Shown here piece after piece: positions 36,281-55,900 of a DNA stretch of 64,000 nt. The notes under the pieces were generated by a model. That model worked only from the letters and a program-made list of their open reading frames with translations, made no database searches and was not told the origin of the DNA. Location: assembly GCF_016432865.1 (NCBI RefSeq), contig NC_067404.1, forward strand, positions 85,498,001 through 85,562,000, read 5' to 3'. Source of the DNA: Antechinus flavipes (lineage: Eukaryota). Positions within the stretch are counted from its first letter, which is position 1; every line of letters begins with the position of its first letter. Made by a program: the position numbers and the translations under genes.

Positions 36281-39200
36281 CTATGCCGTCTGGAACCGCA
36301 GCCATAGGGTCAAGAGTAAGAGGAAGCCCAGAAGGCCCCTGGGCTCTGCCACTGCTGCAGATGTGACAGAGACGGGCTTGCCCACTGACTGACTGAGCCA
36401 GCTGTGGTCAGCCTGGGCAGAAGAAGTCTTGGAGATCCATGGGAAGTAAGGAGCCAGGAGGAAGGTAAGAGACCTGATGCTGGTGAGCCCAGTCTGCCTC
36501 CAGGTTCCATTCTTACCCCGTGAGCGGCACAACAGGGCACTGCCTGGGCCCATGAGATCCTGTGGCACAAACCCAGTACCCCGAGGCTCACACATGTCAA
36601 GCCTTGGGAAGTTGAGCCCCTCCCCTAGTTATAAGCCCGGCTCCCCTCACCGACTTTTTTGTTTCCCATCCTCTCCCATCCCCCACATTGAGGTTGGGGC
36701 TCAAGTTCCTGCCCTCTTCCCCTCTGCCCTCCAACCATGAGTGCGAACTCCCCGAGTGGGCCTCCGTGTCACTCGCCAAAGGGGCCAGGGGTGGGCCTTG
36801 GTGCTGCTCACCAAAGCCACTTGGTATTCTGGCACCCAGGGAGCCAGGCATAGCACGGAGTTCCTGATGCTGCCAGGGAGGTGGCGGGCACAGGACAGAG
36901 CATCCTTCACCTGAACGTGCAGGGCTTGTGGGTTCCGGTCCGTCTCACCTGCAAACAGCCGGGAATCAATCTCCCTGGCCCCATGGCTTTGGGTGCCAGC
37001 GGGTGAAGGGACTAGTGTCGAGCTGGAGGGAGGAGGACACGGCTGGGCATCCTGAAAATGACCTAAGGGTGGGGAGGGAGCAGGGTGAGTAAGGGCAGAA
37101 TCTCAAGGACTTGGGAGCGGGCCAAGGGCACGTCTGCCTGGCATCGGACAGCAGAGGTCACACGTGCGCTCCAATGACTAAGGAGTCCGAGCCGCTGCTC
37201 CTCTGTACCTCCATGTGGAGGAGCAGGGTGCCAGGCGGCACTTTCTGAAGCTGCTGAGGGTTTTCTCAGGATTTTTCCTTGTAATCCAGCTGCTAGGGTG
37301 CCTCTCTCCCCAGTCGCTTTCTTCATCTGCCGCCTCCTTTCTCTTCTCCCCCTTCTCCTTTCCTCTTCCCCTCTCTCCCCCCATCTCTGGCACTCGCTCA
37401 CTCTCCCTTTTTCCTTCCTCCTCCCACCCTTCCCCCTTCTGCCTCCCCTCCCGCCCCTTCAACCAGCCTGACACCGGGAAGCACCGAGCATGGGAAAAAT
37501 GAGGGCGCTGCCTCCTTCGGCCTGCTCGATCTCTACTACCCCTCGGGCTGTGTCCGGCCCTAACCCTTTTCTCTCGTTCCAGGGCCCACAGCTGTTGGGA
37601 TGCTCTTTGTGAAGCAGGAGCCGTGGCTGTTATTTGCTTAAAGCGAACAGTAAGCGCACCACAGTGTGCTGGCCGTGCTCCTGGGCTGCCACCCACAGGG
37701 TCACGGGATTAGCGGAGGGAGTGCTGCGTCCTGGAGGATCTGCCAGCCAGAATGGGGACCTTCCTTTGGCCCGGCTCAGGGCAGATGGTCACATGGCAAA
37801 TACGGCTTAGGGAGTTCCCGAGGCCTCTTGTAAAGAGAACTCCCTAAGGGGCGCCCCGGCCTACTTCAGGATCGCCCGGAAAGGCGAGCCGCCCATCGGT
37901 TGGTGTGGACGCCCTCCTATGGCAGGTTTGGGGCCCGGGGCCGAGGTCTCGTTCGGAGATCTGGTGGCTGTGGGGCCCACGACGGGTCGATTCCAGCTCA
38001 CCCTCTCGGAGTTCTCGGGGCCCTGTGAGCCAGCACTCAGCTTTGTTCACGTCATCCACGTGGCCAACGGGGGCCAGCGGCTGGCTGGAGCCCAGGGGCT
38101 TCTGCAGGAGGACAAGGGCCAGGTCGTTCCAGGGGACCCCATCCACCAACTGGTAGCGCTCGTGCAGGACCACGCTGGAGACGCGGGCGACGGTCATGTT
38201 GCCACCGGGCTGTGGCAGCCCCAGGAATACTGCCATGTTCTCTGTCCTCCTGTCATGGGATGAGAAATTATGAGTTTTTATACCTTGAATGGGCTGCCTG
38301 GATCTGTCCAGTCGTGGGATCTTTAAGCGACTTTAAGAGAACGTTGGGTACCTTTGCACACTGCCCCCCAACATTAGCTATATAAGAGATACGGGGCCTA
38401 GTTCTGCCTGCCACCTTTGAGCCCCGATTCGCTGAGGGACCCCCCGGCCGCCTCCTCTCTGAGGGATGTCTAAGCGAGCCGGCCCCACGAGGAGCCTCCC
38501 ACCCCCACCCCCTGTCGGCTCAGCACTCACATGTGCCGGATACAGTGGGCTGAGGTGAGGATCCAAGACGGGCTGAGGATGGAGCCGCCGCAAAGTCTGC
38601 TGTCACAGGTCACGATCAGTGCTTGCCAGGGTGTGGCGAAGCTCAGAGAAATCCGATTCACCAGGGCTGCGTGTGGGCACAGGGGAGAGTGCATATTGGC
38701 CAAGCCCCTGCCCCAGCCCCTGGGGTCTAGTACTGCCCCACATGAGTCAGGGAGCCTTCTTCCTCCTGGTTCTGTTTCCCCAGGCCTGGGAGCATCGGTG
38801 AGAGGGAGGGGGGAGTCTCACTCACCTTCAGGTTGCAGCAGGGAAGAGAGGGTGGGCCTGGGGGCAGTCTGGACCCAGGGGGGGTGCTGGGATTTCGTGG
38901 AGGCCTTGAGCCAAAGGCTGAAGGGGTGGATACGGCTGAAGACGTAGGGCCGAGTGCAGGTCTCGTCAAAAGCGGTGAGGACCCCCATCTGTACCCAAGG
39001 GGCGTCCTCTGGGTGTGGCTTTGGGCGGCACATCAGTGGGGCTCCCAGGTCTCCCTGCCAGGGGGAGGCAGGAGGTGGTGAGGGCCAGGGTCTGGGAGGG
39101 AAGGCAGCCTGGGCCAGTGGGGGGCACTTATCACCTTGCAGCTGCTCTGGCCCGTCACTTTCTTGGCCTCCACACAGAAGGCCATGGAGCTCTCAATGGG

Positions 39201-42200
39201 CCAGAAGCGGGCACAGTTGCTGACCTCCACCACATCCAGTCGCCGCTTCTGCATGGTCACCAGGTTGCCTGGATGGAATGGAGCACAAGGGAACAGAGGC
39301 TGGGGGCCTCTTACTCTCATCCCACAACCCAGTCTTGCTGAGCAAAGCCTTGGGGTTGGTTTTTTGGGCTACCTGGGTGACCTGGAGCCTCAGTTTTCAT
39401 AGCCGAAAACTGGCAGGATGGCTCTTGACGGTCTGAAAGTCCTCTCCAACCCCAAATCTTGGGCCCCAGGGCTCCCAGAACCCTGTCTGGCTGCCTCATC
39501 TGTTCCTCGGCGCCCCCCGCCCCTGCCTCGCTCAGCTTCTGTGGCCCAGACTCACCCTCGATCAGGGTCCAGCCGGGGACCCAGCAGTCGTGGAGGTGCC
39601 GCCGAGGCTGTATCGCTGGCCTCTTGGAGGGCTCCTCGAGGCACACGGCCAGCGTTCGGGGCTGGAAGCGCAGGGGCTCCTTGAGCAGGATCAGGCCCAA
39701 GCCCGTGGGCCCTTCGAGCCCAAAGTAAGGCAGGACCCGGTGGATGCCCACGAGCTGGGCCCGAACTTGGTCTTCCAGGTCGGTGACTCCAGCCTGGACC
39801 TGGGCCAGGGCTTCCGAATTCCGTCTACGGGCAGCCGAGAAGCCTCTGTAATTGTGTGCACGTGCGGGGGGACGGGAGAAGGTGGCCATCTGGGACTCCC
39901 CCCACCCCGTTCCCTCAACAAAGGAAAATGAGTATTCCCGCCATGGGGACGGGCTGCCTCCAGACACTCACATGAAGTTGGCACAGCTGGCGGTGGTCAG
40001 GACCCACCACTCGTTCAGGATGGAGCCCGAACAGAAGTGGGACAGGGAGAACTGCAAGGAGACCACCCAGGGGAACTCGCCTTCCTCGGCCTCCCAGCAG
40101 GTGGGGCACCGAGCTGCGAAGCCCGGACGTGCGCCGCACTCGGCTGTCGGGAAGAAGGCCAGGCCCCGGTGAGCTCGGGACCCCCACCTTGGGCCTCGGC
40201 AAGCCGTGGTGGCTCAGGGTCCCCTGGCCCTGCCTCTCACCTGGCCCCTGCTCAGAGGACAAGGCCGTCTGGAAGAGCCAATAGGCTTGGAAACTGCTCC
40301 TCCAGCCCAGGCCCAAGAGACACTGGTCCAAGGTGACCCTGAGGGGCTGCTCCTGCTGCAGCCGATGGCGGAGGTCAGGCACGGGGCTCCTGGACCTAGA
40401 GGGTCCTGCCAGAGAGGAGAGATGGGCCGAGGAGGGAAAGGGGGAGGGGGCAGAGGAGGTCGGAAAGGACGAGGGAGCCAGTTGGTCCTTGATGCCGGAG
40501 GGGCCGGCCCCTGAGGAGTCGCTGCCAGGCTGGGATTTGGGCACTGATGGACCTGGGGGTCCCCAGGCCAATGCCTGTAGAGCTCCAGAAAAGAGAGGAG
40601 GCCGCGAGTGAGCAGGGGCTGGGGGCACTGACTGGGGCGAAAGGGGCAACACTGGGGAGAGGAAGGGGCCCCAGTAGGTGAGGGAGCCAGAGAATAGAGC
40701 CGGGGAAGGTGGAAGGCGGACACCGCTGGCGGTTCCTGGCAAGTTCCTCAGATCTAGTCCCTGTACCATGGTGGGAGCTGGGCCGGCCCAGGGGACTATG
40801 GCTTCAGAGGCCATCTCGCTCACGGGTCCAGGCCAGGGGATGATGGCTTTGATGGCCGGGGCTGGCGTGGTCCAAAACCCGGCTGCTTCAGCCACTGGCT
40901 GGGGCAGGGGTGCGGCAAGGCGGGCTCCCAGACTGCCTTCTGACTGGGGCTCAGCTGCGCGCTGAGACCAAGGACCAGGTACTTCCGTCTCAGCCAGAGC
41001 CCAGGGCCCAGCCCCACTGGGAGCCTGCCCAGGCAGTTGGCCAGCTGCTGGTGTCTGGAGAACCCAAGGCCCAGCTGCTTCTGGGGCCACTTCTGAGTCT
41101 GGGGCCATCCAGGGCCTGGCTCGAGCATATGTCAGCTGAGCCCGGGCTCCGAATGTGTTGGACTTGAGAACAGCCGGAACTGTCTGGAATGGAAGAAGCC
41201 AGGCTCCGAGAACATCAGTTGCCGAGTGAGTCTGAGATCCAACAGCTGCCGGAGTTTGGGGTCTGTCTGCATTAGCTGTTGGATGAGTCTGGGATCCAGA
41301 TGGCCATGGGATGTGAGAGTGAGCCCAGGGAGCCACAGTGTGAGCTGCAGGCCGGGGATTCAGGGACCCTCCGGTTGCCGGCCAGGGGGTCGGGGGCCGG
41401 GAGGTCAGGGACCCTCCGGTTGCCGGCCAGGGGGTCGGGGGCCGGGAGGTCAGGGACCCTCCGGTTGCCGGCCAGGGGGTCGGGGGCCGGGAGGTCAGGG
41501 ACCCTCCGGTTGCCGGCCAGGGGGTCGGGGGCCGGGAGGTCAGGGACCCTCCGGTTGCCGGCCAGGGGGTCGGGGGCCGGGAGGTCAGGGACCCTCCGGT
41601 TGCCGGCCAGGGGGTCGGGGGCCGGGAGGTCAGGGGCCCTCGGATTGCTGGCCGGGGGATCTGAGCCTGGGGGATCCACTGGGGCTGTCTGGAAGGTGGC
41701 CAGGGGATCTGAGGCCAGGGGGTCTGGGGTCCTCTGGCAGCTGGTGGGATGATCTGGGACCAGGGGATCCACTGGGGCCGTCCTGTTGCTGGTTGGGGCA
41801 TCTGGGGCCCAGGTGGAGCTCCCTCAGAGACACCTGAAGGCCTGGCTTTTGAAGGAGTGTGCACTCTGGCTGCCTCAGTGACTGAGTGAGTCTCTAGTTG
41901 GGCCAGATTACCGACCTTAGTGAGGCCCAAGGGAGCTGGGGCTTGGGCCATCCCTACAGCTGCTTGAGGTTCTGGTCTGGCTGTCTGCATCCCCTGTTGG
42001 GACGCACCTCCATCCGCAGCTAAGCGACCTAGGGCCAGATCACGGAGAGGCCAAACAGGCCCGGGGTGGATCTGGGAGGTGGGTGCCCTTCCCCGGGGCT
42101 CTCTGGCAGAGCTTCTGGCTGAAGGGGTTGGAGCCCTGGCCTTGGCAGCTGGTGGAATCCCCAGAGGCAGAAACAGGGACTTGACCAAGTCCTTGGGGAG

Positions 42201-43582
42201 GCCCCGAGTGGTGGCTAGGGGGAGCCTGGTGTGGGAGGACCGCTGTCTGGGCGGGGGAAGCTGGTGAGCCTTCGCCGGGTCCCCAGGGCTGGGAGTCACT
42301 GGGAAGGGCCACTGGGCCCGCACAGAATCTATTCCGCTGTCGGCTTCCTCCAGGGCAGAGTATGGAGCCGGGTGCACCCTGGGATGGCTGTAGGGGCTAC
42401 TTGGTGGAAAGAGCATGCAGGGCAAGCTCGGAATTTGCTTCCAAGCAGCGCGTGCCACAGCATCCAGCCAACTGTGGTATGGGGCTGTGCGCACAGCCAG
42501 GATGGGTGTGGAGCAGGCCTTCCCGGGCTCGCCGACCAGCCCCACCAGCTCCTGACGATTTCCAAAGCGGCACAGCACGGGACTGCCGGGCTGCACCTGG
42601 GGGGCAGCGGGGGAAGGAAGGGGCACTCCTTACTCCAGGCGAGTCCCGTCGCTCCAGGGAGGGAGCTCCCTTGGCCTGCTGCTCTCCACAGAGAGCCGGG
42701 GGGGGGGGGGCCCACCCTGGCCCCCAGGCCTAGTGCATACCTGACAGTCTGGGCCTTGCCAGGGATGCATCTGGATACAGAAGGTCTCCCTCCCAGGGGG
42801 ATCAGCTCCCGAGTGGTGGCAGGCCCAGGACCCCAGGATTCTCACCGTGCTCCTCGTGGCTCGCATGAGTCCGGGCTCTGGGGAACCTGCAGGAGACGAG
42901 GGGATGATGGGCGACTCTGCTCGGTCCTGTCACCCAAGCCTGCTTCCTCCCCGGAATCCCGAGTCTCTTCAGTGCTCTGGGTGGGTTCGAGCGAGTCCCT
43001 GCCGAGCCATCGGCCAAAGGCAGAATAGGCGGGGAGGATCAGAGGAACCATTTCTTGATGAGGTGCACTTCTCCACCCAAACTAGGGACCAGGTTGAGGA
43101 CCCGGGTTAGGGTCAGAAAGCGCACTTCCTGTGGAGCCGGGATGACTCCCACAATGTCCTCAAAAAAAAATGGCAGTCCCTTCCTGCCTCCCCATTTTCA
43201 GAGCCACTCAGAGGTCCGATTACACCATCCTGGAGCCAGAACCTTTCTACGGGAAGGATGTTCCCCTCTGACTTAGAAACTTAAAGCTCCAGGGACGGGG
43301 AGGGGGCAGCCAGCTCCCCCCTCCCGAAGCGACTTACTCTGACGCTGGTACACGTGGCACGGCCGATGCCCGCAGAAGGGGCAGTTTTCTTGGACCTCGC
43401 CGGCGTCACGGGTCAGTGGGAGCTGACCCCCAGACAGTGTGGCTGGCTGACGAAGGAATAGCACACCCAGGTCACTCTTGGCTGCCACCGTCCTGGCTGG
43501 GGGCACAAAGGTGGGGTGCAGGCAGATCCCAGAGCCACTGAGCCAGGTCCCAGAACTCCTCACATGCAACAGACCAGAATTG
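36281..43582 (-). CDS. Uncharacterised multi-domain inactive trypsin-like serine protease homolog (three S1 domains; 5' exons outside the window)
   Basis: Exons 43338-43582, 42741-42886, 40241-42596, 39972-40143, 39556-39824, 39135-39268, 38826-39054, 38531-38666, 38002-38249, 36812-36948, 36281-36559. All GT/AG, phases chain without a stop (4351 nt). S1 motifs: [37 protein letters not shown]; [24 protein letters not shown]; [12 protein letters not shown]; CWVPGW; GDLGAPLMC. Confidence 0.88.
41363..41640 (-). repeat. Coding 45-bp VNTR, 6 near-perfect copies encoding ([15 protein letters not shown])6
   Basis: + strand unit gggaccctccggttgccggccagggggtcgggggccgggaggtca; degenerate copies continue to ~41820. 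Confidence 0.95.
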
Positions 43583-43949
43583 CTGGGGAGACAGTGAGAA
43601 GGATTCTGGTCAGTGGAGGCATGGGGAGGGAAGAGGAGCACTTCATCCAAGCACACCGCCTTCGACACAGAAGGGTTGGTGGGCCAGCAGACGAAAGAAG
43701 CACAGACGGGAATATGGGATGCCAGGGCAGTGGTAGGATGTGGGGGGGGGACTCCCAAGAAGGCATGTCTGATGGGAGTGGCCCAAAAGGCAGATCTGCC
43801 TCAGAGAGCCATTGTGGGGATCAGGGTTACATTTCCCCCATGGACATCAAGATCAGAGAACCCATAGGGAGATCAGAGGCAGATACACACAGACACACAC
43901 ACCCCCCTGCCCCCGGCATGGAGATGAGAAAAACAGACACACAGTGGAG

Positions 43950-46900
43950 ATAAAGGAGGGAAGCCTCACAATAGAAAAGAGGCAGAAAACACCAATGAAT
44001 ATCAGAGGGAAAGATATCCCCAATGAAGATCAAAGATGGAATGTAAGGCATGAAAATAAAAGGCAGAAATTCCCAATGAAAATCAAGGGTGGAAGCCCTG
44101 CCATGGAAATGAGAGGCAGAGATCCCCAATGAAGATCAGAGGCAGAGATCATCAATGAAGATCAAGGGTGGAAGCCCTGCCATGGAAATGAGAGTCAGAG
44201 ATCCCTAATGAAGATCAGAAGTAGACCCCCCATGGAGAGGAGAGGCAGAGATCCCCAATGACGATCAGAGGCAGAGATCCCCAATGAAGATCAAGGGTGG
44301 AAGCCCTGCCATGGAAATGAGAGGAAGAGACAGCAAATGAAGATAAGAGGCAGACCCCCTAAGGAAATGAGAGGTAGAGCTTCCCAATTAAGATCACAGG
44401 TAGACCCCCCCATGGAAATGAGACGCAGAGATCCCGAATGAAGATAAGAGGCAGACCCCCTAAGGAAATGAGAGGTAGAGCTTCCCAATTAAGATCACAG
44501 GTAGACCCCCCCATGGAAATGAGACGCAGAGATCCCGAATGAAGATAAGAGGCAGACCCCCGAAGGAAATGAGAAGCAGAGATCCTCAAGATCAGAGGCA
44601 GAGATCCCCAATGACCATCAATGGTGGAAGCCCTGACATGGAAATGAGAGGCAGAAATAGCAAATGAAGATAAGAGGGAGACCCCCTAAGGAAATGAGAA
44701 GCAGAGATCCCCAATGAACATCCCAGGTTAGACCCCCCATGGAAATGAGAGGCAGAGATCCCCAGTGAAGATCAGAGGGAAAGATCCCCAATGGAGATCA
44801 AGGGTGGAAGCCCTGCCATGAGAGACAGCAAATGAAGATAAGAGGCAGACACCGTAAGGAAATGAGAGGTAGAGCTTCCCAATGAAGATCACAGGTACAC
44901 CACCCATGGAAATGAGAGGCAGAACATCCCCAAGGAAGATCAGAGGCAGAGATCCCCAATGAAGATCAAGGGTGGAAGCCCTGCCATGGAAATGAGAGTC
45001 AGAGATCCCTAATGAAGATCAGAGGTAGACCCCCCATGGAGAGGAGAGGCAGAGATGGCGATGAAGATGAGAAATAGAGATTCCCAATGAAGATCAGACG
45101 AAGGACGCCCATGGAAATGAGAGGCAGAGATCCCCAATGAAGATCAGAGGGAAAGATCCCCAATGAAGATCAAGGGTGGAAGCCCTGCCATGAGAGACAG
45201 CAAATGAAGATAAGAGGCAGACACCGTAAGGAAATGAGAGGTAGAGATTCCCAATGAAGATCACAGGTAGACCACCCATGGAAATGAGAGGCAGACATCC
45301 CCAAGGAAGATCAGAGGCAGAGATCCCCAATGAAGATCAAGGGTGGAAGCCCTGCCATGGAAATGAGAGTCAGAGATCCCTAATGAAGATCAGAGGTAGA
45401 CCCCCCATGGAGAGGAGAGGCAGAGATGGCGATGAAGATGAGAAATAGAGATTCCCAATGAAGATCAGACGAAGGACGCCCATGGAAATGAGAGGCAGAG
45501 ATCCCCAATGAAGATCAGAGGCAGAGATCCCCAATGAAGATCAAGGGTGGAAGCCCTGCCATGAGAGACAGCAAATGAAGATAAGAGGCAGACATCGTAA
45601 GGAAATGAGAGGTAGAGCTTCCCAATAAAGATCACAGGTAGACCACCCATGGAAATGAGAGGCAGACATCCCCAAGGAAGATCAGAGGCAGAGATCCCCA
45701 ATGAAGATCAAGGGTGGAAGCCCTGCCATGGAAATGAGAGTCAGAGATCCCTAATGAAGATCAGAGGTAGACCCCCATGGAAAGGAGAGGCAGAGATGGC
45801 GATGAAGATGAGAAATAGAGATTCCCAATGAAGTTCAGACGAAGAACGCCCATGGAAATGAGAGGCAGAGATCCCCAGTGAAGATCAGAGGCAGAGATCC
45901 CCAATGAAGATCAAGGGTGGAAGCCCTGCCATGAGAGACAGCAAATGAAGATAAGAGGCAGACACCGTAAGGAAATGAGAGGTAGAGATTCCCAATGAAG
46001 ATCACAGGTAGACCACCCATGGAAATGAGAGGCAGACATCCCCAAGGAAGATCAGAGGCAGAGATCCCCAATGAAGATCAAGGGTGGAAGCCCTGCCATG
46101 GAAATGAGAGTCAGAGATCCCTAATGAAGATCAGAGGTAGACCCCCATGGAGAGGAGAGGCAGAGATGGCGATGAAGATGAGAAATAGAGATTCCCAATG
46201 AAGATCAGACGAAGGACGCCCATGGAAATGAGAGGCAGAGATCCCCAATGAAGATCAGAGGCAGAGATCCCCAATGAAGATCAAGGGTGGAAGCCCTGCC
46301 ATGAGAGACAGCAAATGAAGATAAGAGGCAGACATCGTAAGGAAATGAGAGGTAGAGCTTCCCAATAAAGATCACAGGTAGACCACCCATGGAAATGAGA
46401 GGCAGAGATGGCGATGAAGATGAGAAGTAGAGATTCTCAATGAAGATCAGATGAAGAACGTCCATGGAAATGAGAGGGAGAGATCCCCAATGAAGATCTG
46501 AGGCAGACCCAACACGGAAATGAGAGGCAGAGATCCCCAATGAAGATCTGAGGCAGACCCAACACGGAAATGAGAGGCAGAGATCCCCAATGAATATTAG
46601 AGGCAGAGAGATCCCCAATGAAGATCAAGAGTGGAACCCAAGCCATGGAAATGATAGGCAGATATCCCCAATGAAGTTCACAGGTAGACCACCCATGGAA
46701 ATGAGCGGCAGAGATCCCTAATGAAGAATAGAGGCAGAGAGGTCCCCAATAAAAATCATAGGCACACCCCCAATGGAAATGAGGGGCAGAGATCCCCAAT
46801 GAAGATCAGAGGCAGAGATCATCAATGAAGATCAAGGGTGGAAGCCCTGCCATGGAAATGAGAGGCAGAGATTCCCAATGAAGATCAGAAGCAGAGATCC

Positions 46901-49900
46901 CCAATGACGATCAAGTGTGGAAGCCAAGCCATGGAAATGAGTGGCAGAAATCCTGAATGAAGATAAGAGGCAGACCCCCCAAGGAAATGAGAAGCAGAGA
47001 TCCCCAATGAAGATCAGAGGCAGACATCCCCAAAGTAGATCAATGGTGGAAGCGCTGCCATGGAAATGAGAGTCAGAGATCGCTAATGAAGATCAGAGGT
47101 AGACCCCCCATGGAAATGGGACGCAGAGATCCCGAATGAAGATAAGAGGCAGACCCAACATGGAAATGAGAGGCAGAGATCCCCAGTGACGATCAAGGGT
47201 GGAACCAAGCCATGGAAATGAGTGGCAGAAATCCTGAATGAAGATAAGAGGGAGACCCCCTAAGGAAATGAGAAGCAGAGATCCCCAATGAACATCCAGG
47301 TTAGACCCCCATGGAAATGAGAGGCAGAGATCCCGAATGACTATCACAGGCAGAATTCCCCAAATGAGGTTCAAGGGTGGAACTAAAGGCATGGAAATGA
47401 GGGGCAGAGATCCCCAGTGAAGATCAGAGGCAGAGATCATCAATGAAGATCAAGGGTGGAAGCCCTGCCATGGAAATGAGAGTCAGAGATCCCTAATGAA
47501 GATCAGAGGTAGACCCCCCATGGAAATGGGACGCAGAGATCCCGAATGAAGATAAGAGGCAGACCCAACATGGAAATGAGAGGCAGAGATCCCCAATGAC
47601 GATCAAGGGTGGAACCCAAGCCATGGAAATGAGTGGCAGAAATCCTGAATGAAGATAAGAGGCAGACCCCCTAAGGAAATGAGAAGCAGAGATCCTCAAT
47701 CAAGATCAGAGGCAGAGATCCCCAATGACCATCAATGGTGGAAGCCCTGACATGGAAATGAGAGGCAGAAATAGCAAATGAAGATAAGAGGGAGACCCCC
47801 TAAGGAAATGAGAAGCAGAGATCCCCAATGAACATCCCAGGTTAGACCCCCATGGAAATGAGAGGCAGAGATCCCCAATGAAGATCAAGGGTGGAAGCCC
47901 TGCCATGAGAGACAGCAAATGAAGATAAGAGGCAGACACCGTAAGGAAATGAGAGGCAGAGATCCCCAATGAAGATCAAGGGTGGAAGCCCTGCCATGAG
48001 AGACAGCAAATGAAGATAAGAGGCAGACACCGTAAGGAAATGAGAGGTAGAGATTCCCAATGAAGATCAGATGAAGAACGTCCATGGAAATGAGAGGGAG
48101 AGATCCCCAATGAAGATCTGAGGCAAACCCAACATGGAAATGAGAGGCAGAGATCCCCAATGAATATTAGAGGCAGAGAGATCCCCAATGAAGATCAAGA
48201 ATGGAACCAAAGCCATGGAAATGAGAGGCAGAGATCCCCAATGAATATTAGAGGCAGAGAGATCCCCAATGAAGATCAAGAGTGGAACCAAAGCCATGGA
48301 AATGATAGGCAGAGATCCCCAATGAAGATCAAGGGTGGAAGCCCTGCCATGAAAGACAGCAAATGAAGATAAGAGGCAGACACCGTAAGGAAATGAGAGG
48401 TAGAGATTCCCAAGGAAGATCACAGGTAGACCACCCATGGAAATGAGAGGCAGAGATGGCGATGAAGATGAGAAATAGAGATTCCCAATGAAGATCAGAC
48501 GAAGAACGCCCATGGAAATGAGTGGCAGAGACAGACCCCCTAAGGAAATGAGAAGCAGAGATACCCAATGACGATCACGGGCAGAGATCCCCAATGAAGA
48601 CCATGGGTGGAACCAAAGTCAGGGAAATGAGAAGCAGAGATCCCTAAAGAAGAATAGAGGCAGAGAGGTCCCTAATAAAAATGATAGGTAGTCCCCCAAT
48701 GGAAATGAGAGGTAGGGATCCCCAATGACGATCAGAGGCAGAGATCATCAATGAAGATCAAGGGTGGAAGCCCTGCCATGGAAATGAGAGTCAGAGATCC
48801 CTAATGAAGATCAGAGGTAGACCCCCCCATGGAAAGGAGAGGCAGAGAGGGCGATGAAGATGAGAAATAGAGATTCCCAATGAAGATCAGACAAAGGACG
48901 CCCATGAAAATGAGAGGCAGAGATCCCCAATGAAGATCAGAGGCAGAGATCCCCAATGAAGATCAAGGGTGGAAGCCCTGCCATGAGAGACAGCAAATGA
49001 AGATAAGAGGCAGACATCGTAAGGAAATGAGAGGTAGAGATTCCCAATGAAGATCACAGGTAGACCCCCCCATGGAAATGAGACGCAGAGATCCCGAATG
49101 AAGATAAGAGGCAGACCCCCTAAGGAAATGAGAAGCAGAGATCCTCAATCAAGATCAGAGGCAGAGATCCCCAATGACCACCAATGGTGGAAGCCCTGCC
49201 ATGGAAATGAGAGGCAGAAATAGCAAATGAAGATAAGAGGCAGACCCCCCATGGAAATGAGAGGCAGAGATTCCCAATGAAGATCAGAGGCAGAGATCCC
49301 CGTAGATCAATGGTGGAAGCGCTGCCATGGAAATGAGAGTCAGAGATAGCAAATGAAGATCAGAAGCAGAGATCCCCAATGAAGATCAAGAGTGGAACCA
49401 AAGTCATGGAAATGACAGGCAGAGATCCCCAATGAAGTTCACAGGTAGACCACCCATGGAAATGAGAGGCAGAGATCCCCAATGAAAAATAGAGGCAGAG
49501 AGGTCCCCAATAAAAATCACAGGCACACCCCCAATGGAAATGAGAGGTAGGCATCCCCAATGAAGATCAGAGGCAGAGATCATTAATGAAGATCAAGGGT
49601 GGAAGCCCTGCCATGGAAATGAGAGTCAGAGATCCCTAATGAAGATCAGAGGTAGACCCCCCATGGAGAGGAGAGGCAGAGATGGCGATGAAGATGAGAA
49701 ATAGAGATTCCCAATGAAGATCAGACGAAGAACACCCATGGAAATGAGAGGCAGAGATCCCCAATGAAGATCAGAGGGAAAGATCCCCAATGAAGATCAA
49801 GGGTGGAAGCCCTGCCATGAGAGACAGCAAATGAAGATAAGAGGCAGACACCGTAAGGAAATGAGAGGCAGAGATCCCCAAGTTCACAGGTAGACCACCC

Positions 49901-52900
49901 ATGGAAATGAGAGGCAGAGATGGCGATGAAGATGAGAAGTAGAGATTCCCAATGAAGATCAGATGAAGAACGTCCATGGAAATGAGAGGGAGAGATCCCC
50001 AATGAAGATCTGAGGCAGACCCAACATGGAAATGAGAGGCAGAGATCCCCAATGAATATTAGAGGCAGAGAGATCCCCAATGAAGATCAAGAGTGGAACC
50101 CAAGCCATGGAAATGATAGGCAGAGATCCCCAATGAAGTTCACAGGTAGACCACCCATGGAAATGAGCGGCAGAGATCCCTAATGAAGAATAGAGGCAGA
50201 GATCATCAATGAAGATCAAGGGTGGAAGCCCTGCCATGGAAATGAGACTCAGAAATCCCTAATGAAGATCAGAGGTAGACCCCCCATGGAGAGGAGAGGC
50301 AGAGATCCCCAATGACGATCAGAGGCAGAGATCCCCAATGAAGATCAAGGGTGGAAGCCCTGCCATGGAAATGAGAGGCAGAGATTCCCAATGAAGATCA
50401 GAAGCAGAGATCCCCAATGACAATCAAGTGTGGAAGCCAAGCCATGGAAATGAGTGGCAGAAATCCTTAATGAAGATAAGAGGCAGACCCCCCAAAGAAA
50501 TGAGAAGCAGAGATCCCCAATGAAGATCAGAGGCAGACATCCCCAAAGTAGATCAATGGTGGAAGCGCTGCCATGGAAATGAGAGTCAGAGATCCCTAAT
50601 GAAGATCAGAGGTAGACCCCCCATGGAAATGGGACGCAGAGATCCCGAATGAAGATAAGAGGCAGACCCAACATGGAAATGAGAGGCAGAGATCCCCAAT
50701 GACGATCAAGGGTGGAACCCAAGCCATGGAAATGAGTGGCAGAAATCCTGAATGAAGATAAGAGGCAGACCCAACATGGAAATGAGAGGCAGAGATCCCC
50801 AATGACGATCAAGGGTGGAACCCAAGCCATGGAAATGAGTGGCAGAAATCCTGAATGAAGATAAGAGGGAGACCCCCTAAGGAAATGAGAAGCAGAGATC
50901 CCCAATGAACATCCCAGGTTAGACCCCCCATGGAAATGAGAGGCAGAGATCCCGAATGACTATCACAGGCAGAATTCCCCAAATGAGGTTCAAGGGTGGA
51001 ACTAAAGGCATGGAAATGAGGGGCAGAGATCCCCAGTGAAGATCAGAGGCAGAGATCATCAATGAAGATCAAGGGTGGAAGCCCTGCCATGGAAATGAGA
51101 GTCAGAGATCCCTAATGAAGATCAGAGGTAGACCCCCCATGGAAATGGGATGCAGAGATCCCGAATGAAGATAAGAGGCAGACCCAACATGGAAATGAGA
51201 GGCAGAAATCCTGAATGAAGATAAGAGGCAGACCCCCTAAGGAAATGAGAAGCAGAGATCCTCAATCAAGATCAGAGGCAGAGATCCCCAATGACCATCA
51301 ATGGTGGAAGCCCTGCCATGGAAATGAGAGGCAGAAATAGCAAATGAAGATAAGAGGCAGACCCCCCATGGAAATGAGAGGCAGAGATTCCCAATGAAGA
51401 TCAGAGGCAGAGATCCCCGTAGATCAATGGTGGAAGCGCTGCCATGGAAATGAGAGTCAGAGATAGCAAATGAAGATCAGAAGCAGAGATCCCCAATGAA
51501 GATCAAGAGTGGAACCAAAGTCATGGAAATGACAGGCAGAGATCCCCAATGAAGTTCACAGGTAGACCACCCATGGAAATGAGAGGCAGAGATCCCCAAT
51601 GAAAAATAGAGGCAGAGAGGTCCCCAATAAAAATCACAGGCACACCCCCAATGGAAATGAGAGGTAGGCATCCCCAATGAAGATCAGAGGCAGAGATCAT
51701 TAATGAAGATCAAGGGTGGAAGCCCTGCCATGGAAATGAGAGTCAGAGATCCCTAATGAAGATCAGAGGTAGACCCCCCATGGAGAGGAGAGGCAGAGAT
51801 GGCGATGAAGATGAGAAATAGAGATTCCCAATGAAGATCAGACGAAGAACACCCATGGAAATGAGAGGCAGAGATCCCCAATGAAGATCAGAGGGAAAGA
51901 TCCCCAATGAAGATCAAGGGTGGAAGCCCTGCCATGAGAGACAGCAAATGAAGATAAGAGGCAGACACCGTAAGGAAATGAGAGGCAGAGATCCCCAAGT
52001 TCACAGGTAGACCACCCATGGAAATGAGAGGCAGAGATGGCGATGAAGATGAGAAGTAGAGATTCCCAATGAAGATCAGATGAAGAACGTCCATGGAAAT
52101 GAGAGGGAGAGATCCCCAATGAAGATCTGAGGCAGACCCAACATGGAAATGAGAGGCAGAGATCCCCAATGAATATTAGAGGCAGAGAGATCCCCAATGA
52201 AGATCAAGAGTGGAACCCAAGCCATGGAAATGATAGGCAGAGATCCCCAATGAAGTTCACAGGTAGACCACCCATGGAAATGAGCGGCAGAGATCCCTAA
52301 TGAAGAATAGAGGCAGAGATCATCAATGAAGATCAAGGGTGGAAGCCCTGCCATGGAAATGAGACTCAGAAATCCCTAATGAAGATCAGAGGTAGACCCC
52401 CCATGGAGAGGAGAGGCAGAGATCCCCAATGACGATCAGAGGCAGAGATCCCCAATGAAGATCAAGGGTGGAAGCCCTGCCATGGAAATGAGAGGCAGAG
52501 ATTCCCAATGAAGATCAGAAGCAGAGATCCCCAATGACAATCAAGTGTGGAAGCCAAGCCATGGAAATGAGTGGCAGAAATCCTTAATGAAGATAAGAGG
52601 CAGACCCCCCAAAGAAATGAGAAGCAGAGATCCCCAATGAAGATCAGAGGCAGACATCCCCAAAGTAGATCAATGGTGGAAGCGCTGCCATGGAAATGAG
52701 AGTCAGAGATCCCTAATGAAGATCAGAGGTAGACCCCCCATGGAAATGGGACGCAGAGATCCCGAATGAAGATAAGAGGCAGACCCAACATGGAAATGAG
52801 AGGCAGAGATCCCCAATGACGATCAAGGGTGGAACCCAAGCCATGGAAATGAGTGGCAGAAATCCTGAATGAAGATAAGAGGGAGACCCCCTAAGGAAAT

Positions 52901-55900
52901 GAGAAGCAGAGATCCCCAATGAACATCCCAGGTTAGACCCCCCATGGAAATGAGAGGCAGAGATCCCGAATGACTATCACAGGCAGAATTCCCCAAATGA
53001 GGTTCAAGGGTGGAACTAAAGGCATGGAAATGAGGGGCAGAGATCCCCAGTGAAGATCAGAGGCAGAGATCATCAATGAAGATCAAGGGTGGAAGCCCTG
53101 CCATGGAAATGAGAGTCAGAGATCCCTAATGAAGATCAGAGGTAGACCCCCCATGGAAAGGAGAGGCAGAGATGGCGATGAAGATGAGAAACAGAGATTC
53201 CCAATGAAGATCAGACGAAGGACGCCCATGGAAATGAGAGGCAGAGATCCCCAATGAAGATCAGAGGCAGAGATCCCCAATGAAGATCAAGGGTGGAAGC
53301 CCTGCCATGAGAGACAGCAAATGAAGATAAGAGGCAGACATCGTAAGGAAATGAGAGGTAGAGCTTCCCAATGAAGATCACAGGTAGACCACCCATGGAA
53401 ATGAGAGGCAGAGATGGCGATGAAGATGAGAAGTAGAGATTCCCAATGAAGATCAGAGGCAGAGATCCCCAAAGTAGATCAATGGTGGAAGCGCTGCCAT
53501 GGAAATGAGAGTCAGAGATCCCTAATGAAGATCAGAAGCAGACCCCCTATGGAAATGAGAGGCAGAGATCCCCAATGACGAGTAGAGGCAGAGATCCCCA
53601 AATGAGGTTCAAGGGTGGAACTCAAGCTATGGAAATGAAAGCAGAGATCCCCAATGAAGTTCAGACGAAGAACGCCCATGGAAATGAGAGGCAGAGATCC
53701 CTAATGAAGAATAGAGGCAGAGAGGACCCCAATAAAAATCATAGGCACACCCCCAATGGAAATGAGGCACAGAGATCCCCAATGAAGATCAGAGGCAGAG
53801 ATCATCAATGAAGATCAAGGGTGGAAGCCCTGCCATGGAAATGAGAGTCAGAGATCCCTAATGAAGATCAGAGGTAGACCCCCCCCATGGAGAGGAGAGG
53901 CAGAGATCCCCAATGACGATCAGAGGCAGAGATCCCCAATGAAGATCAAGGGGGGAAGCCCTGCCATGGAAATGAGAGGCAGAGATTCCCAATGAAGATC
54001 AGAAGCAGAGATCCCCAATGACGATCAAGGGTGGAACTCAAGCCATGGAAATGTGAGCAGAGATCCCCGATGAAGTTTAGAATTAGACCCCCCAAGGAAA
54101 TGAGAAGCAGAGATCCCCAATGAAGATCAGAGGCAGACATCCCCAAAGTAGATCAATGGTGGAAGCGCTGCCATGGAAATGAGAGTCAGAGATCCCTAAT
54201 GAAGATCAGAGGTAGACCCCCCATGGAAATGGGACGCAGAGATCCCGAATGAAGATAAGAGGCAGACCCAACATGGAAATGAGAGGCAGAGATCCCCAGT
54301 GACGATCAAGGGTGGAACCCAAGCCATGGAAATGAGTGGCAGAAATCCTGAATGAAGATAAGAGGCAGACCCCCTAAGGAAATGAGAAGCAGAGATCCTC
54401 AATCAAGATCAGAGGCAGAGATCCCCAATGACCATCAATGGTGGAAGCCCTGACATGGAAATGAGAGTCAGAGATCCCTAATGAAGATCAGAGGGAAAGA
54501 TCCCCAATGAAGATCAAGGGTGGAAGCCCTGCCATGAGAGACAGCAAATGAAGATAAGAGGCAGACATCGTAAGGAAATGAGAGGCAGAGATCCCCAAGT
54601 TCACAGGTAGACCACCCATGGAAATGAGAGGCAGAGATGGCGATGAAGATGAGAAGTAGAGATTCTCAATGAAGATCAGATGAAGAACGTCCATGGAAAT
54701 GAGAGGGAGAGATCCCCAATGAAGATCTGAGGCAGACCCAACATGGAAATGAGAGGCAGAGATCCCCAATGAATATTAGAGGCAGAGAGATCCCCAATGA
54801 AGATCAAGAGTGGAACCCAAGCCATGGAAATGATAGGCAGATATCCCCAATGAAGTTCACAGGTAGACCACCCATGGAAATGAGCGGCAGAGATCCCTAA
54901 TGAAGAATAGAGGCAGAGAGGTCCCCAATAAAAATCATAGGCACACCCCCAATGGAAATGAGGGGCAGAGATCCCCAATGAAGATCAGAGGCAGAGATCA
55001 TCAATGAAGATCAAGGGTGGAAGCCCTGCCATGGAAATGAGAGGCAGAGATTCCCAATGAAGATCAGAAGCAGAGATCCCCAATGACGATCAAGTGTGGA
55101 AGCCAAGCCATGGAAATGAGTGGCAGAAATCCTGAATGAAGATAAGAGGCAGACCCCCCAAGGAAATGAGAAGCAGAGATCCCCAATGAAGATCAGAGGC
55201 AGACATCCCCAAAGTAGATCAATGGTGGAAGCGCTGCCATGGAAATGAGAGTCAGAGATCGCTAATGAAGATCAGAGGTAGACCCCCCATGGAAATGGGA
55301 CGCAGAGATCCCGAATGAAGATAAGAGGCAGACCCAACATGGAAATGAGAGGCAGAGATCCCCAGTGACGATCAAGGGTGGAACCCAAGCCATGGAAATG
55401 AGTGGCAGAAATCCTGAATGAAGATAAGAGGGAGACCCCCTAAGGAAATGAGAAGCAGAGATCCCCAATGAACATCCCAGGTTAGACCCCCCATGGAAAT
55501 GAGAGGCAGAGATCCCGAATGACTATCACAGGCAGAATTCCCCAAATGAGGTTCAAGGGTGGAACTAAAGCCATGGAAATGAGGGGCAGAGATCCCCAGT
55601 GAAGATCAGAGGCAGAGATCATCAATGAAGATCAAGGGTGGAAGCCCTGCCATGGAAATGAGAGTCAGAGATCCCTAATGAAGATCAGAGGTAGACCCCC
55701 CATGGAAATGGGATGCAGAGATCCCGAATGAAGATAAGAGGCAGACCCAACATGGAAATGAGAGGCAGAGATCCCCAATGACGATCAAGGGTGGAACCCA
55801 AGCCATGGAAATGAGTGGCAGAAATCCCGAATGAAGATAAGAGGCAGACCCAACATGGAAATGAGAGGCAGAGATCCCCAATGACGATCAAGGGTGGAAC

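What the first reader, a model, noticed from the sequence alone, without database searches (positions are those of the whole stretch)
36281..43582. Intact X-linked triple-domain pseudo-protease gene (>=1450 aa), fragmented and unrecognisable in the ORF track
Seen: 11 exons with canonical splice sites whose phases chain with no stop, arguing for purifying selection. The layout is S1 domain 1 (partial) - ~740-aa Pro/Trp linker - S1 domain 2 - S1 domain 3 - hydrophobic tail. Known: tandem-S1 proteins (polyserases PRSS36/PRSS53/TMPRSS9, ovochymases) and inactive testis S1 proteins (PRSS54, PRSS37) exist, but I cannot assign this one to a named gene. Inference: a non-catalytic, surface-anchored sperm/germ-cell scaffold or protease decoy. 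Uncharacterised eutherian LOC orthologs near HSD17B10 may exist.
Basis: partly seen in the sequence, partly recalled or inferred. Interest (0 to 1): 0.8.

Follow-up and report, generated by a model that had tools for sequence, protein, structure and literature searches.

The report
Marsupial PRSSLX, a triple dead-protease gene
This is a real, expressed gene, the yellow-footed antechinus copy of PRSSLX (X-linked partner of the placental Y-chromosome gene PRSSLY, published in 2022); it encodes three trypsin-like domains that all lack the catalytic serine, so the gene is known, though this architecture has not been written down.

Summary
On the minus strand, 43582 to 36281, lie 11 exons with GT..AG introns that chain into 1,449 codons without a stop. 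Nine of the ten in-window junctions appear in spliced RNA contigs of two runs.

The gene is not unassignable. It is RefSeq LOC127542365 of Antechinus flavipes. It is the ortholog of wallaby PRSSLX, the marsupial X-linked homolog of eutherian Y-linked PRSSLY (Hughes et al. 2022, PMC9178871).

Other marsupials have 13 coding exons. Exons 1-2 (signal peptide and first part of domain 1) are not in the window. They should lie beyond a satellite of at least 20 kb that fills intron 2.

All three S1 domains lack Ser195, here and across the tetrapod homologs I aligned. Domains evolve at dN/dS 0.2-0.4 and the Pro/Trp-rich linker at 0.55-0.75.

Points the paper does not mention:
- the N-terminal third S1 domain, absent from eutherian Y copies;
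- the dead catalytic sites;
- the satellite shared with the Tasmanian devil.

One open problem: both RNA contigs run unspliced through the exon-3 acceptor, so the antechinus 5' end and signal peptide are unverified.

Verdict: a known kind and an ordinary ortholog, with modest new detail. The scan's reader had also noted the intronic satellite (s1-189938).

The parts
43338..43582 (-). Exon 3 (245 nt), the middle of S1 domain 1. It holds the retained Asp102 equivalent (KSDLGVLFL). RefSeq leaves it out of the CDS.
   Evidence: It is 81-84% identical to exon 3 of Sarcophilus and Sminthopsis. It is spliced to exon 4 in RNA contigs of X4 and X5. dN/dS is 0.20-0.32 against the other dasyurids. The upstream acceptor is inferred by homology only; both RNA contigs read through it.
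42741..42886 (-). Exon 4 (146 nt), domain 1. The RefSeq start codon (MRATRST) is at 42866.
   Evidence: Exact mapping of P0001. Joints 42886/43338 and 42596/42741 are present in X4 and X5.
40241..42596 (-). Exon 5 (2,356 nt). Its first ~55 codons are the C-terminal end of domain 1 (VQPGSPVLC in place of GDSGGPLVC). The rest is a ~730-aa linker: 19% Pro, 27 Trp.
   Evidence: No stop in 785 codons against a mean of 13.5 in shuffles. Linker dN/dS is 0.55-0.75, significantly below 1.
41360..41658 (-). Near-perfect 45-nt x 6.7 tandem repeat inside the linker exon. It encodes repeats of the 15-aa unit [15 protein letters not shown].
   Evidence: (98% matches) and the translation. All short-read contigs break here.
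38826..40143 (-). S1 domain 2, exons 6-9: 40143-39972, 39824-39556, 39268-39135, 39054-38826. The triad is fully replaced: His57 to Ser, Asp102 to Gly, Ser195 to Leu.
   Evidence: Pfam Trypsin on the protein, E 1.8e-44. Alignment to plasma kallikrein 6t7p. All four introns are seen as RNA joints. dN/dS 0.20-0.25.
36338..38666 (-). S1 domain 3, exons 10-13: 38666-38531, 38249-38002, 36948-36812, 36559-36284. His57 (TSAHC) and Asp102 (NDLAL) are kept. Ser195 is Pro, and Cys191 is lost.
   Evidence: Alignment to granzyme M 2zgc. Joints 9/10 and 10/11, plus the loose end for 11/12. dN/dS 0.26-0.31.
36281..36337 (-). C-terminal hydrophobic tail ([18 protein letters not shown]) followed by the stop codon. 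It looks like a GPI-attachment signal.
   Evidence: Translation. A comparable short hydrophobic C-terminus is present in every ortholog printed, from axolotl to bat. It is predicted as a terminal helix.
43583..43872 (-). 3' end of intron 2, homologous to the end of Sarcophilus intron 2. In antechinus RNA contigs it is transcribed contiguously with exon 3.
   Evidence: Colinear alignment to L001 from 31150. X4 record 11 and X5 record 16 cover 43336-43872 without a break. The related species in run X6 has a 1-nt deletion at 43742.
43873..64000 (.). Satellite with a 26-bp unit that fills intron 2 and runs off the window. Exons 1-2 are expected beyond it.
   Evidence: The same array, 20.3 kb long, sits in Sarcophilus intron 2.

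Best explanation
This is the Antechinus flavipes ortholog of PRSSLX, the ancestral X-linked gametolog of the eutherian Y-linked gene PRSSLY.

Shown: the full marsupial gene has 13 coding exons. They encode a signal peptide, S1 domain 1, a long fast-evolving Pro/Ser/Trp-rich linker in one giant exon, S1 domains 2 and 3, and a short hydrophobic C-terminal tail. None of the three domains has the nucleophilic Ser195, and domains 1 and 2 also lack His57. The protein therefore cannot be a conventional serine protease. The folds are nevertheless kept by purifying selection, and the mRNA is made and spliced.

Inferred: it acts as a non-catalytic, secreted and probably GPI-anchored binding protein. The dead S1 domains would serve as protein-recognition modules held away from the membrane by a mucin-like stalk. 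This resembles other testis S1 proteins such as PRSS55 (GPI-anchored) and the inactive PRSS37.

The window holds exons 3-13. Exons 1-2 should lie beyond a satellite of at least 20 kb in intron 2.
For: Identity:
- The 904-aa ORF matches RefSeq XP_051823850.1 (LOC127542365) at 100%.
- Domains 2-3 are 79% identical (E 7e-289) to wallaby P0005. That protein is also the published TPA record DAZ89703.1, 'Y-linked serine-like protease-like'.
- Further hits are TPA PRSSLY of Peromyscus and Rousettus and the platypus and echidna homologs.
- Hughes et al. describe X-linked marsupial homologs, the giant upstream exon and low Ka/Ks in the protease part.

Synteny: the order HUWE1, GARIN-like gene, this gene, HSD17B10, RIBC1 holds in Sarcophilus, Sminthopsis, Dromiciops and wallaby. 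In the bilby the fetched locus does not reach HUWE1. The window is colinear with the Sarcophilus locus from exon 3 to RIBC1.

Gene structure: 13 exons of matching sizes in the other marsupials, except that the bilby RefSeq model merges exons 12-13.

Expression: nine junctions seen in two RNA runs.

Dead sites: alignments to solved proteases and across 19 homologs.

Selection:
- dN/dS is 0.2-0.4 in the domains and 0.55-0.75 in the linker, all significantly below 1.
- All 9 indels against a related species fall in non-coding sequence.

Tail and signal peptide. PRSS55 is GPI-anchored (PMC6208766 abstract).
Against: - The function is inferred only. No binding partner, localisation or GPI anchor has been tested in any species.
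- Mouse Prssly knockouts are fertile. The sex-ratio effect reported by Hughes et al. was not seen in an independent deletion (PMC7617377).
- In antechinus the signal-peptide exons were not seen. Both RNA contigs read through the exon-3 acceptor, and RefSeq starts the CDS in exon 4. The main product in the sampled tissue may therefore lack a signal peptide and two thirds of domain 1, and so could not be surface-anchored.
- The AlphaFold models are mediocre: pLDDT 48 for domain 1 and 67 for domains 2-3.
Confidence: 0.88

Rival explanations
1. In antechinus the gene is 5'-truncated in practice. The satellite of at least 20 kb in intron 2 has uncoupled the ancestral promoter and exons 1-2. Transcription starts in or near the satellite, and the product begins at Met 42866. 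Such a product has no signal peptide and only a domain 1 stump. It would be either a cytosolic neofunctional form or a first step towards gene loss.
For: - RNA contigs of both runs cover 43336-43872 without a break at the 43582 acceptor, while introns 3 and 7 have zero depth.
- RefSeq isoforms X1 and X2 both start in exon 4.
- The exon-3 reading frame has no ATG between its upstream stop at 43803-43801 and exon 4.
- Eutherian PRSSLY models likewise lack domain 1 and a signal-peptide-like N-terminus.
Against: - Exon 3 is intact, keeps its acceptor, and evolves at dN/dS 0.2-0.3.
- Sarcophilus carries the same satellite yet has open exons 1-2, with dN/dS about 0.39 against Sminthopsis.
- Contigs cannot show minor spliced forms or transcript starts.
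- The tissue of X4 and X5 is unknown.
Confidence: 0.3
2. It is a decaying pseudogene that merely looks open.
For: - PRSSLX was lost in opossums, and PRSSLY was lost repeatedly in eutherians.
- The linker evolves fast.
- The catalytic residues are gone.
Against: - 1,449 codons have no stop, and shuffles of the linker exon never reach zero stops.
- All canonical splice sites are used in RNA.
- dN/dS is well below 1 in every part.
- There are no exonic indels against a related species.
- The dead sites are shared by all tetrapod homologs, so they are ancient and not a sign of decay.
Confidence: 0.03
3. Domain 3, which keeps His57 and Asp102, is still some kind of hydrolase using an unconventional nucleophile.
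For: Therian domain 3 retains TSAHC/TAAHC and NDLAL.
Against: - The Ser195 position is Pro in marsupials, and the GDSGG motif and Cys191 are gone.
- Monotreme, lizard and axolotl domain 3 also lack His and Asp, so catalysis cannot be the conserved function.
- There is no R-IVGG-type activation site before the domain.
Confidence: 0.04

Closest known systems
PRSSLX / 'Y-linked serine-like protease-like' of tammar wallaby (DAZ89703.1, BK059512; Hughes et al. 2022, PMC9178871)
   Same: Ortholog. It has the same 13-exon plan with equal exon sizes (172, 269, 134, 229, 136, 248 nt and so on). Domains 2-3 are 79% identical. The neighbours are the same, and so are the signal peptide, three S1 domains, linker and tail.
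   Different: - The antechinus linker exon is longer (2,356 against 1,732 nt) and has its own 45-nt repeat.
- Antechinus intron 2 holds a satellite of at least 20 kb that the wallaby lacks.
- The antechinus 5' exons have not been seen.
Eutherian PRSSLY (mouse, bull, bat, deer mouse)
   Same: - Domains 2 and 3 are about 46-50% identical to the antechinus ones, with the same dead sites (GDLGAP in domain 2; TAAHC and NDLAL kept in domain 3).
- A giant Trp-rich repeat exon lies upstream.
- The C-terminal tail is hydrophobic.
   Different: - It is Y-linked or secondarily autosomal, and testis-specific.
- The available models have no domain 1 and no signal-peptide-like N-terminus.
PRSS55, which Hughes et al. 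report as the closest paralog
   Same: It is a testis-expressed S1-family protein with a C-terminal membrane anchor; the PMC6208766 abstract says it is GPI-anchored.
   Different: It has a single S1 domain and is described as a chymotrypsin-like serine protease. It is essential for mouse male fertility. I did not test the paralogy here.
Polyserases (TMPRSS9, PRSS36, PRSS53) and ovochymases
   Same: Several S1 domains in one chain, some of them inactive (established knowledge). Automatic names such as 'polyserase-2-like' have been given to bat PRSSLY.
   Different: They are not orthologous. No vertebrate polyserase or ovochymase ranked among the hits, and the best ovochymase-named hit is an insect protein at 26% identity. 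They have no giant linker exon. In PRSSLX every domain is dead.
Inactive testis S1 proteins (PRSS37, PRSS54)
   Same: They are catalytically dead S1 folds kept by selection. The Atlas feature search lists 'putative inactive serine protease 37' among the nearest clusters.
   Different: They are single-domain proteins. The similarity is only at family level.

Membership tests
PRSSLY/PRSSLX gene family (Hughes et al. 2022) | Sequence orthology to published members | tested here: met
   79% identity and E 7e-289 to wallaby P0005 (= DAZ89703.1). 46-50% identity to TPA PRSSLY of Peromyscus and Rousettus and to the platypus homolog.
PRSSLY/PRSSLX gene family (Hughes et al. 2022) | Position in the ancestral X region, syntenic among marsupials | tested here: met
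   The window is colinear with the Sarcophilus locus from exon 3 through HSD17B10 and RIBC1. HUWE1, a GARIN-like gene, PRSSLX, HSD17B10 and RIBC1 occur in that order in four other marsupials; the fifth, bilby, matches as far as its fetched locus reaches. The HUWE1 side lies outside this window. X-linkage of the antechinus scaffold is inferred, not measured.
PRSSLY/PRSSLX gene family (Hughes et al. 2022) | Very long single coding exon upstream of the protease part, poorly conserved | tested here: met
   Exon 5 is 2,356 nt. Linker dN/dS is 0.55-0.75 against 0.2-0.3 in the domains.
Peptidase S1 / chymotrypsin fold (PF00089) | Profile match and fold | tested here: met
   Pfam Trypsin E 1.8e-44 with 2 stretches in antechinus, and 3 stretches in Dromiciops. 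PDB sequence hits reach E 6e-20 (domain 2), 2.5e-13 (domain 3) and 3.8e-5 (wallaby domain 1). The top 50 listed Foldseek hits for the domain 1 model are all S1 proteases, but the model is weak.
Active S1 serine proteases | Catalytic triad His57-Asp102-Ser195 | tested here: not met
   Domain 1: Ser, Asp, Pro. Domain 2: Ser, Gly, Leu. Domain 3: His, Asp, Pro.
Polyserases and ovochymases | Orthology to TMPRSS9, PRSS36, PRSS53 or OVCH1/2 | tested here: not met
   No such vertebrate protein appears among the hits. Only insect 'ovochymase-1-like' (26%) and 'CTR1' (23%) appear. That search covered proteins of 750-2,380 aa only.
GPI-anchored membrane serine proteases (PRSS55, PRSS21, prostasin type) | C-terminal GPI-attachment signal that is actually processed | not testable with these tools
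   A short terminal hydrophobic stretch preceded by small residues is conserved in all homologs. No predictor or experiment was available.

The most novel reading that the evidence does not exclude
A dasyurine-specific satellite of about 20 kb in intron 2 has cut the antechinus gene off from its signal-peptide exons. The expressed product would then be an N-terminally truncated PRSSLX without a leader. That would be the same remodelling (loss of domain 1 and signal peptide) that the eutherian Y-linked PRSSLY underwent independently. It would suggest the conserved job of domains 2-3 does not need secretion.
Probability: 0.2. Interest if true: 0.5.

Novelty: new member of a known kind. Interest (0 to 1): 0.3.

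Why it matters
PRSSLY is the one reported case of an ancestral sex-chromosome gene that eutherians kept on the Y and lost from the X. Marsupial PRSSLX is its only X-linked witness.

This locus adds a well-supported dasyurid copy. It also adds three points that I did not find in the searchable literature:
- The ancestral protein had three S1 domains, not two, and the eutherian Y copies dropped the first.
- Every domain has been catalytically dead since before amphibians and amniotes split. Any function, including the disputed sex-ratio effect in mice, must be non-proteolytic.
- A large intronic satellite arose in the devil and antechinus lineage.

These points refine a known story. They do not open a new one.

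Tried and rejected
- I first read 43640-43720 as a frameshifted relic of the domain 1 His exon. I rejected this. The stretch aligns to the 3' end of Sarcophilus intron 2, a related species has a 1-nt indel there, and the true exon 2 lies upstream of the satellite in Sarcophilus.
- My own acceptor for exon 7 (about 39845) was wrong. RNA, RefSeq and the orthologs use 39824.
- I tried to reach antechinus exons 1-2 through the upstream neighbour gene. I searched a Sarcophilus exon of it against the representatives, then its Sminthopsis ortholog against the 90% clusters. No antechinus product was listed, so no locus could be fetched.
- Look-ups of P0003 and P0004 failed because only the longest isoform is on record. 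I solved this through the cluster lists.
- Single exons gave weak or no Pfam hits. The full RefSeq protein was needed.
- The Atlas feature search gave only generic S1 clusters.
- The domain 1 AlphaFold model was poor (pLDDT 48).
- One blastn run timed out on the satellite, and I redid it without the satellite.
- Holmlund et al. 2022 (PMC9476217) is not held, so I could not check whether it discusses catalytic residues.
Full report
**What is in the sequence**

The window is a GC-rich mammalian stretch. The region 36281-43582 carries, on the minus strand, a chain of open segments with trypsin-like motifs. Reading the minus strand in three frames gave canonical GT..AG boundaries whose phases connect. 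The 904-codon open stretch at 39918-42629 matched a RefSeq protein at 100%: 'uncharacterized protein LOC127542365 isoform X2 [Antechinus flavipes]', 1,361 aa. So the window comes from the yellow-footed antechinus, a dasyurid marsupial.

Exact mapping of that protein places ten coding exons between 42866 and 36284. One further exon, 43582-43338, lies upstream and RefSeq does not count it as coding. It is 81-84% identical to exon 3 of the Tasmanian devil and dunnart orthologs. With it, the window holds 11 exons, 4,348 nt and 1,449 codons without a stop.

**More than chance**

- The 2,356-nt exon 5 has no in-frame stop. Its other five frames have 14-19 stops. In 2,000 dinucleotide-preserving shuffles the mean was 13.5, the minimum 4, and none reached zero.
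- A related species (run X6, about 2% divergent) differs from the window by nine indels in the 6 kb I laid. All nine lie in introns or upstream of exon 3. None lies in the roughly 3.9 kb of exons.

**Expression**

Four public runs were laid on 37951-43950.

- Runs X4 and X5 come from the same organism and study as the DNA runs that hold the whole stretch. They hold only the exonic 61% of the sampled words.
- Their contigs skip introns 3, 4, 5, 6, 7, 8, 9 and 10 exactly at the predicted CT..AC (minus-strand GT..AG) boundaries.
- A 24-letter loose end at the exon 11 donor is the start of exon 12 as used by isoform X2 (acceptor 36948). It is not the upstream acceptor of isoform X1.
- Introns 3 and 7 have zero depth, so the RNA is well spliced.
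- The tissue of these runs is not disclosed.

**Identity**

Searching domains 2-3 found orthologs annotated as 'uncharacterized' in Sarcophilus, Sminthopsis, Notamacropus, Dromiciops and Macrotis (73-94% identity). Hits at 38-50% identity followed: 'TPA_inf: PRSSLY' of Peromyscus, 'Y-linked serine-like protease(-like)' of Rousettus, platypus and echidna, and unnamed proteins of two lizards. An unnamed axolotl protein followed at 31%. The wallaby protein P0005 is identical to DAZ89703.1, the third-party record of Hughes et al. 2022.

That paper (PMC9178871) makes these points:
- Most of the ORF sits in one huge, poorly conserved exon with 'no identifiable domains'.
- Ka/Ks is near 1 in that exon and 0.001-0.31 in the protease part.
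- It calls the marsupial gene PRSSLX.

Its expression table gives devil testis 1.5-2.2 TPM against 0.5 or less elsewhere. Wallaby testis is 5-10 TPM, with low signal in ovary, spleen and other tissues. Antechinus is not in the paper.

**Synteny**

In Sarcophilus, Sminthopsis, Dromiciops and wallaby the order is HUWE1, a GARIN/FAM71-like gene, PRSSLX, HSD17B10-like (adh_short, 263-268 aa), RIBC1 (RIB43A). The bilby locus shows the same order but starts inside the GARIN-like gene, so HUWE1 was not seen there. The window aligns colinearly with the Sarcophilus locus from 43860 down to 23536, that is from the end of intron 2 through HSD17B10 and RIBC1.

**The full gene and what the window lacks**

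The orthologs have 13 coding exons with conserved sizes (the bilby RefSeq model merges exons 12 and 13):
- exon 1: signal peptide;
- exon 2: 175 nt, the 'His exon' of domain 1;
- exons 3 and 4: 245 and 146 nt;
- exon 5: the giant exon, 1,732-3,226 nt;
- exons 6-9: 172, 269, 134 and 229 nt (domain 2);
- exons 10-13: 136, 248, 134-137 and 264-276 nt (domain 3).

Exons 1-2 have no match anywhere in the window. From about 43873 to the window end the sequence is a satellite with a 26-bp unit. In Sarcophilus the same satellite occupies 20.3 kb of intron 2, with exon 2 about 370 nt upstream of it and exon 3 about 300 nt downstream. Sminthopsis has a 970-nt intron 2 with a single unit. Wallaby, bilby and Dromiciops have none.

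The antechinus exons 1-2 should lie beyond 64000. I could not fetch that sequence, because the route through the neighbour gene failed.

**An unresolved 5' end**

Both RNA contigs that join exon 3 to exon 4 continue upstream through the exon-3 acceptor. They run uninterrupted to 43872 and into the satellite. The exon-3 frame has a stop at 43803-43801 and no ATG before exon 4. This explains why RefSeq begins the CDS at Met 42866.

There are two possibilities. Either the main transcript in the sampled tissue starts in or near the satellite, giving a protein without signal peptide and most of domain 1. Or the exon 2-3 spliced form exists but was too rare to survive assembly.

Against decay of the 5' part:
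- Exon 3 keeps its acceptor and its frame.
- It evolves at dN/dS 0.20-0.32.
- The devil, with the same satellite, has open exons 1-2.

Contigs cannot settle this.

**Architecture and dead sites**

Pfam finds Trypsin (E 1.8e-44) in antechinus and three Trypsin stretches in Dromiciops. Alignments to solved proteases fix the catalytic positions.

| Domain | His57 | Asp102 | Ser195 |
|---|---|---|---|
| 1 (wallaby; exon 3 and the start of exon 5 give the same Asp and Pro in antechinus) | Ser | Asp kept | Pro |
| 2 | Ser | Gly | Leu |
| 3 | His kept | Asp kept | Pro (Cys191 also lost) |

Across the homologs I aligned (19 sequences for domains 2-3, 11 for domain 1), from axolotl to bats, no domain has Ser195. 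Domain 2 is dead at all three positions in every species. The pseudo-protease state is therefore ancestral to tetrapods and is not a sign of decay. The canonical disulfide cysteines of domain 2 are invariant.

Domain 1 is present, with a signal-peptide-like N-terminus in most models, in marsupials, monotremes, two lizards and axolotl. It is undetectable in the eutherian models, even with a domain 1 profile and filters off (E above 0.3, against 1e-93 to 1e-120 in controls). The N-termini of the eutherian models do not look like signal peptides.

A domain 1 model was poor (pLDDT 48), but the top 50 listed Foldseek matches were all S1 proteases. The domain 2-3 model (pLDDT 67) shows two beta-rich lobes, each ending in a helix, plus a terminal helix for the tail.

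In the papers I could search, none combines PRSSLY with 'catalytic triad', and the Hughes text contains neither 'catalytic' nor 'tandem'. One relevant paper was not available.

**Selection**

Pairwise Nei-Gojobori estimates among six marsupials:

| Part | dN/dS |
|---|---|
| Domain 2 | 0.20-0.25 |
| Domain 3 | 0.26-0.31 |
| In-window part of domain 1 | 0.23-0.40 |
| Linker | 0.55-0.73 |

All are significantly below neutrality by a binomial test, with P from 1e-11 to 0.01. Antechinus-branch changes are too few to test for relaxation.

**How it probably works**

*Shown:* a conserved, expressed, multi-domain S1 protein with no possible charge-relay nucleophile. It has a Pro/Ser/Ala/Trp-rich linker that varies by repeat expansion (a 45-nt x 6.7 repeat at 41360-41658). 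Every homolog has a short C-terminal hydrophobic stretch preceded by small residues.

*Inferred:* the protein enters the secretory pathway and is GPI-anchored, like the paralog PRSS55. It would use its dead S1 domains as binding modules on an extended stalk. In which cell this happens is open. Published data point to testis as the highest site in marsupials, with a somatic background. In mice the Y copy is dispensable for fertility, and a reported sex-ratio shift was not reproduced.

**Verdict**

- It is wrong that no name can be given, and wrong about where the eutherian orthologs are.
- This is a further ortholog of a published gene.
- The overlooked first domain, the ancient dead sites, the dasyurine intronic satellite and the unspliced 5' end in antechinus RNA are useful footnotes.

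Noticed in passing
window 43873-64000; L001 10838-31135; L002 about 11031: A satellite with a 26-bp unit (AATGAAGATCAGAGGCAGAGATCCCC on the + strand) fills at least 20 kb of PRSSLX intron 2 in antechinus and 20.3 kb in the Tasmanian devil. The dunnart has one unit at the same place. Wallaby, bilby and Dromiciops have none. It therefore expanded in place in the devil and antechinus lineage.
   Followed up: yes
window 43583-43872: RNA contigs of two runs are contiguous from the satellite edge through the exon-3 acceptor into exon 3, while other introns have no RNA depth. This points to an alternative start or a retained intron end. It explains why RefSeq starts the CDS in exon 4.
   Followed up: partly
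L001 5491-9620, L002 5494-8347, L003 5621-9598, L004 5726-9668, L005 1-9571: A GARIN/FAM71-like gene (PF12480) lies between HUWE1 and PRSSLX in five marsupials, only about 400 bp upstream of PRSSLX exon 1. Opossum and platypus FAM71A-like proteins score next in the search. No antechinus product was found in the protein database.
   Followed up: partly
window 41360-41658: A 45-nt x 6.7 tandem repeat with 98% matches lies inside the coding linker exon. Exon 5 length ranges from 1,732 nt (wallaby) to 3,226 nt (devil), so the linker grows and shrinks by repeat turnover while staying in frame.
   Followed up: partly
P0042, P0008, P0009, P0010 (eutherian PRSSLY models): The eutherian Y-linked copies have no detectable first S1 domain and no signal-peptide-like N-terminus. 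They keep the hydrophobic C-terminal tail and a Trp-rich repeat region.
   Followed up: partly
window about 37062 versus 36948: RefSeq isoform X1 uses an upstream acceptor for exon 12 that adds 38 residues inside domain 3. The RNA loose end and all orthologs support the X2 acceptor at 36948.
   Followed up: yes
window 43401 and 43707: The RNA runs differ from the assembly by C>T at 43401 (X4 only; Gly to Ser in exon 3, the residue that Sminthopsis has) and at 43707 (both runs; non-coding). These are probably polymorphisms.
   Followed up: no
L003 12513-12777: The Dromiciops RefSeq model has a 265-nt exon 4 where all other marsupials have 146 nt. This inserts about 40 residues into domain 1 and probably comes from a mis-called donor.
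   Followed up: no
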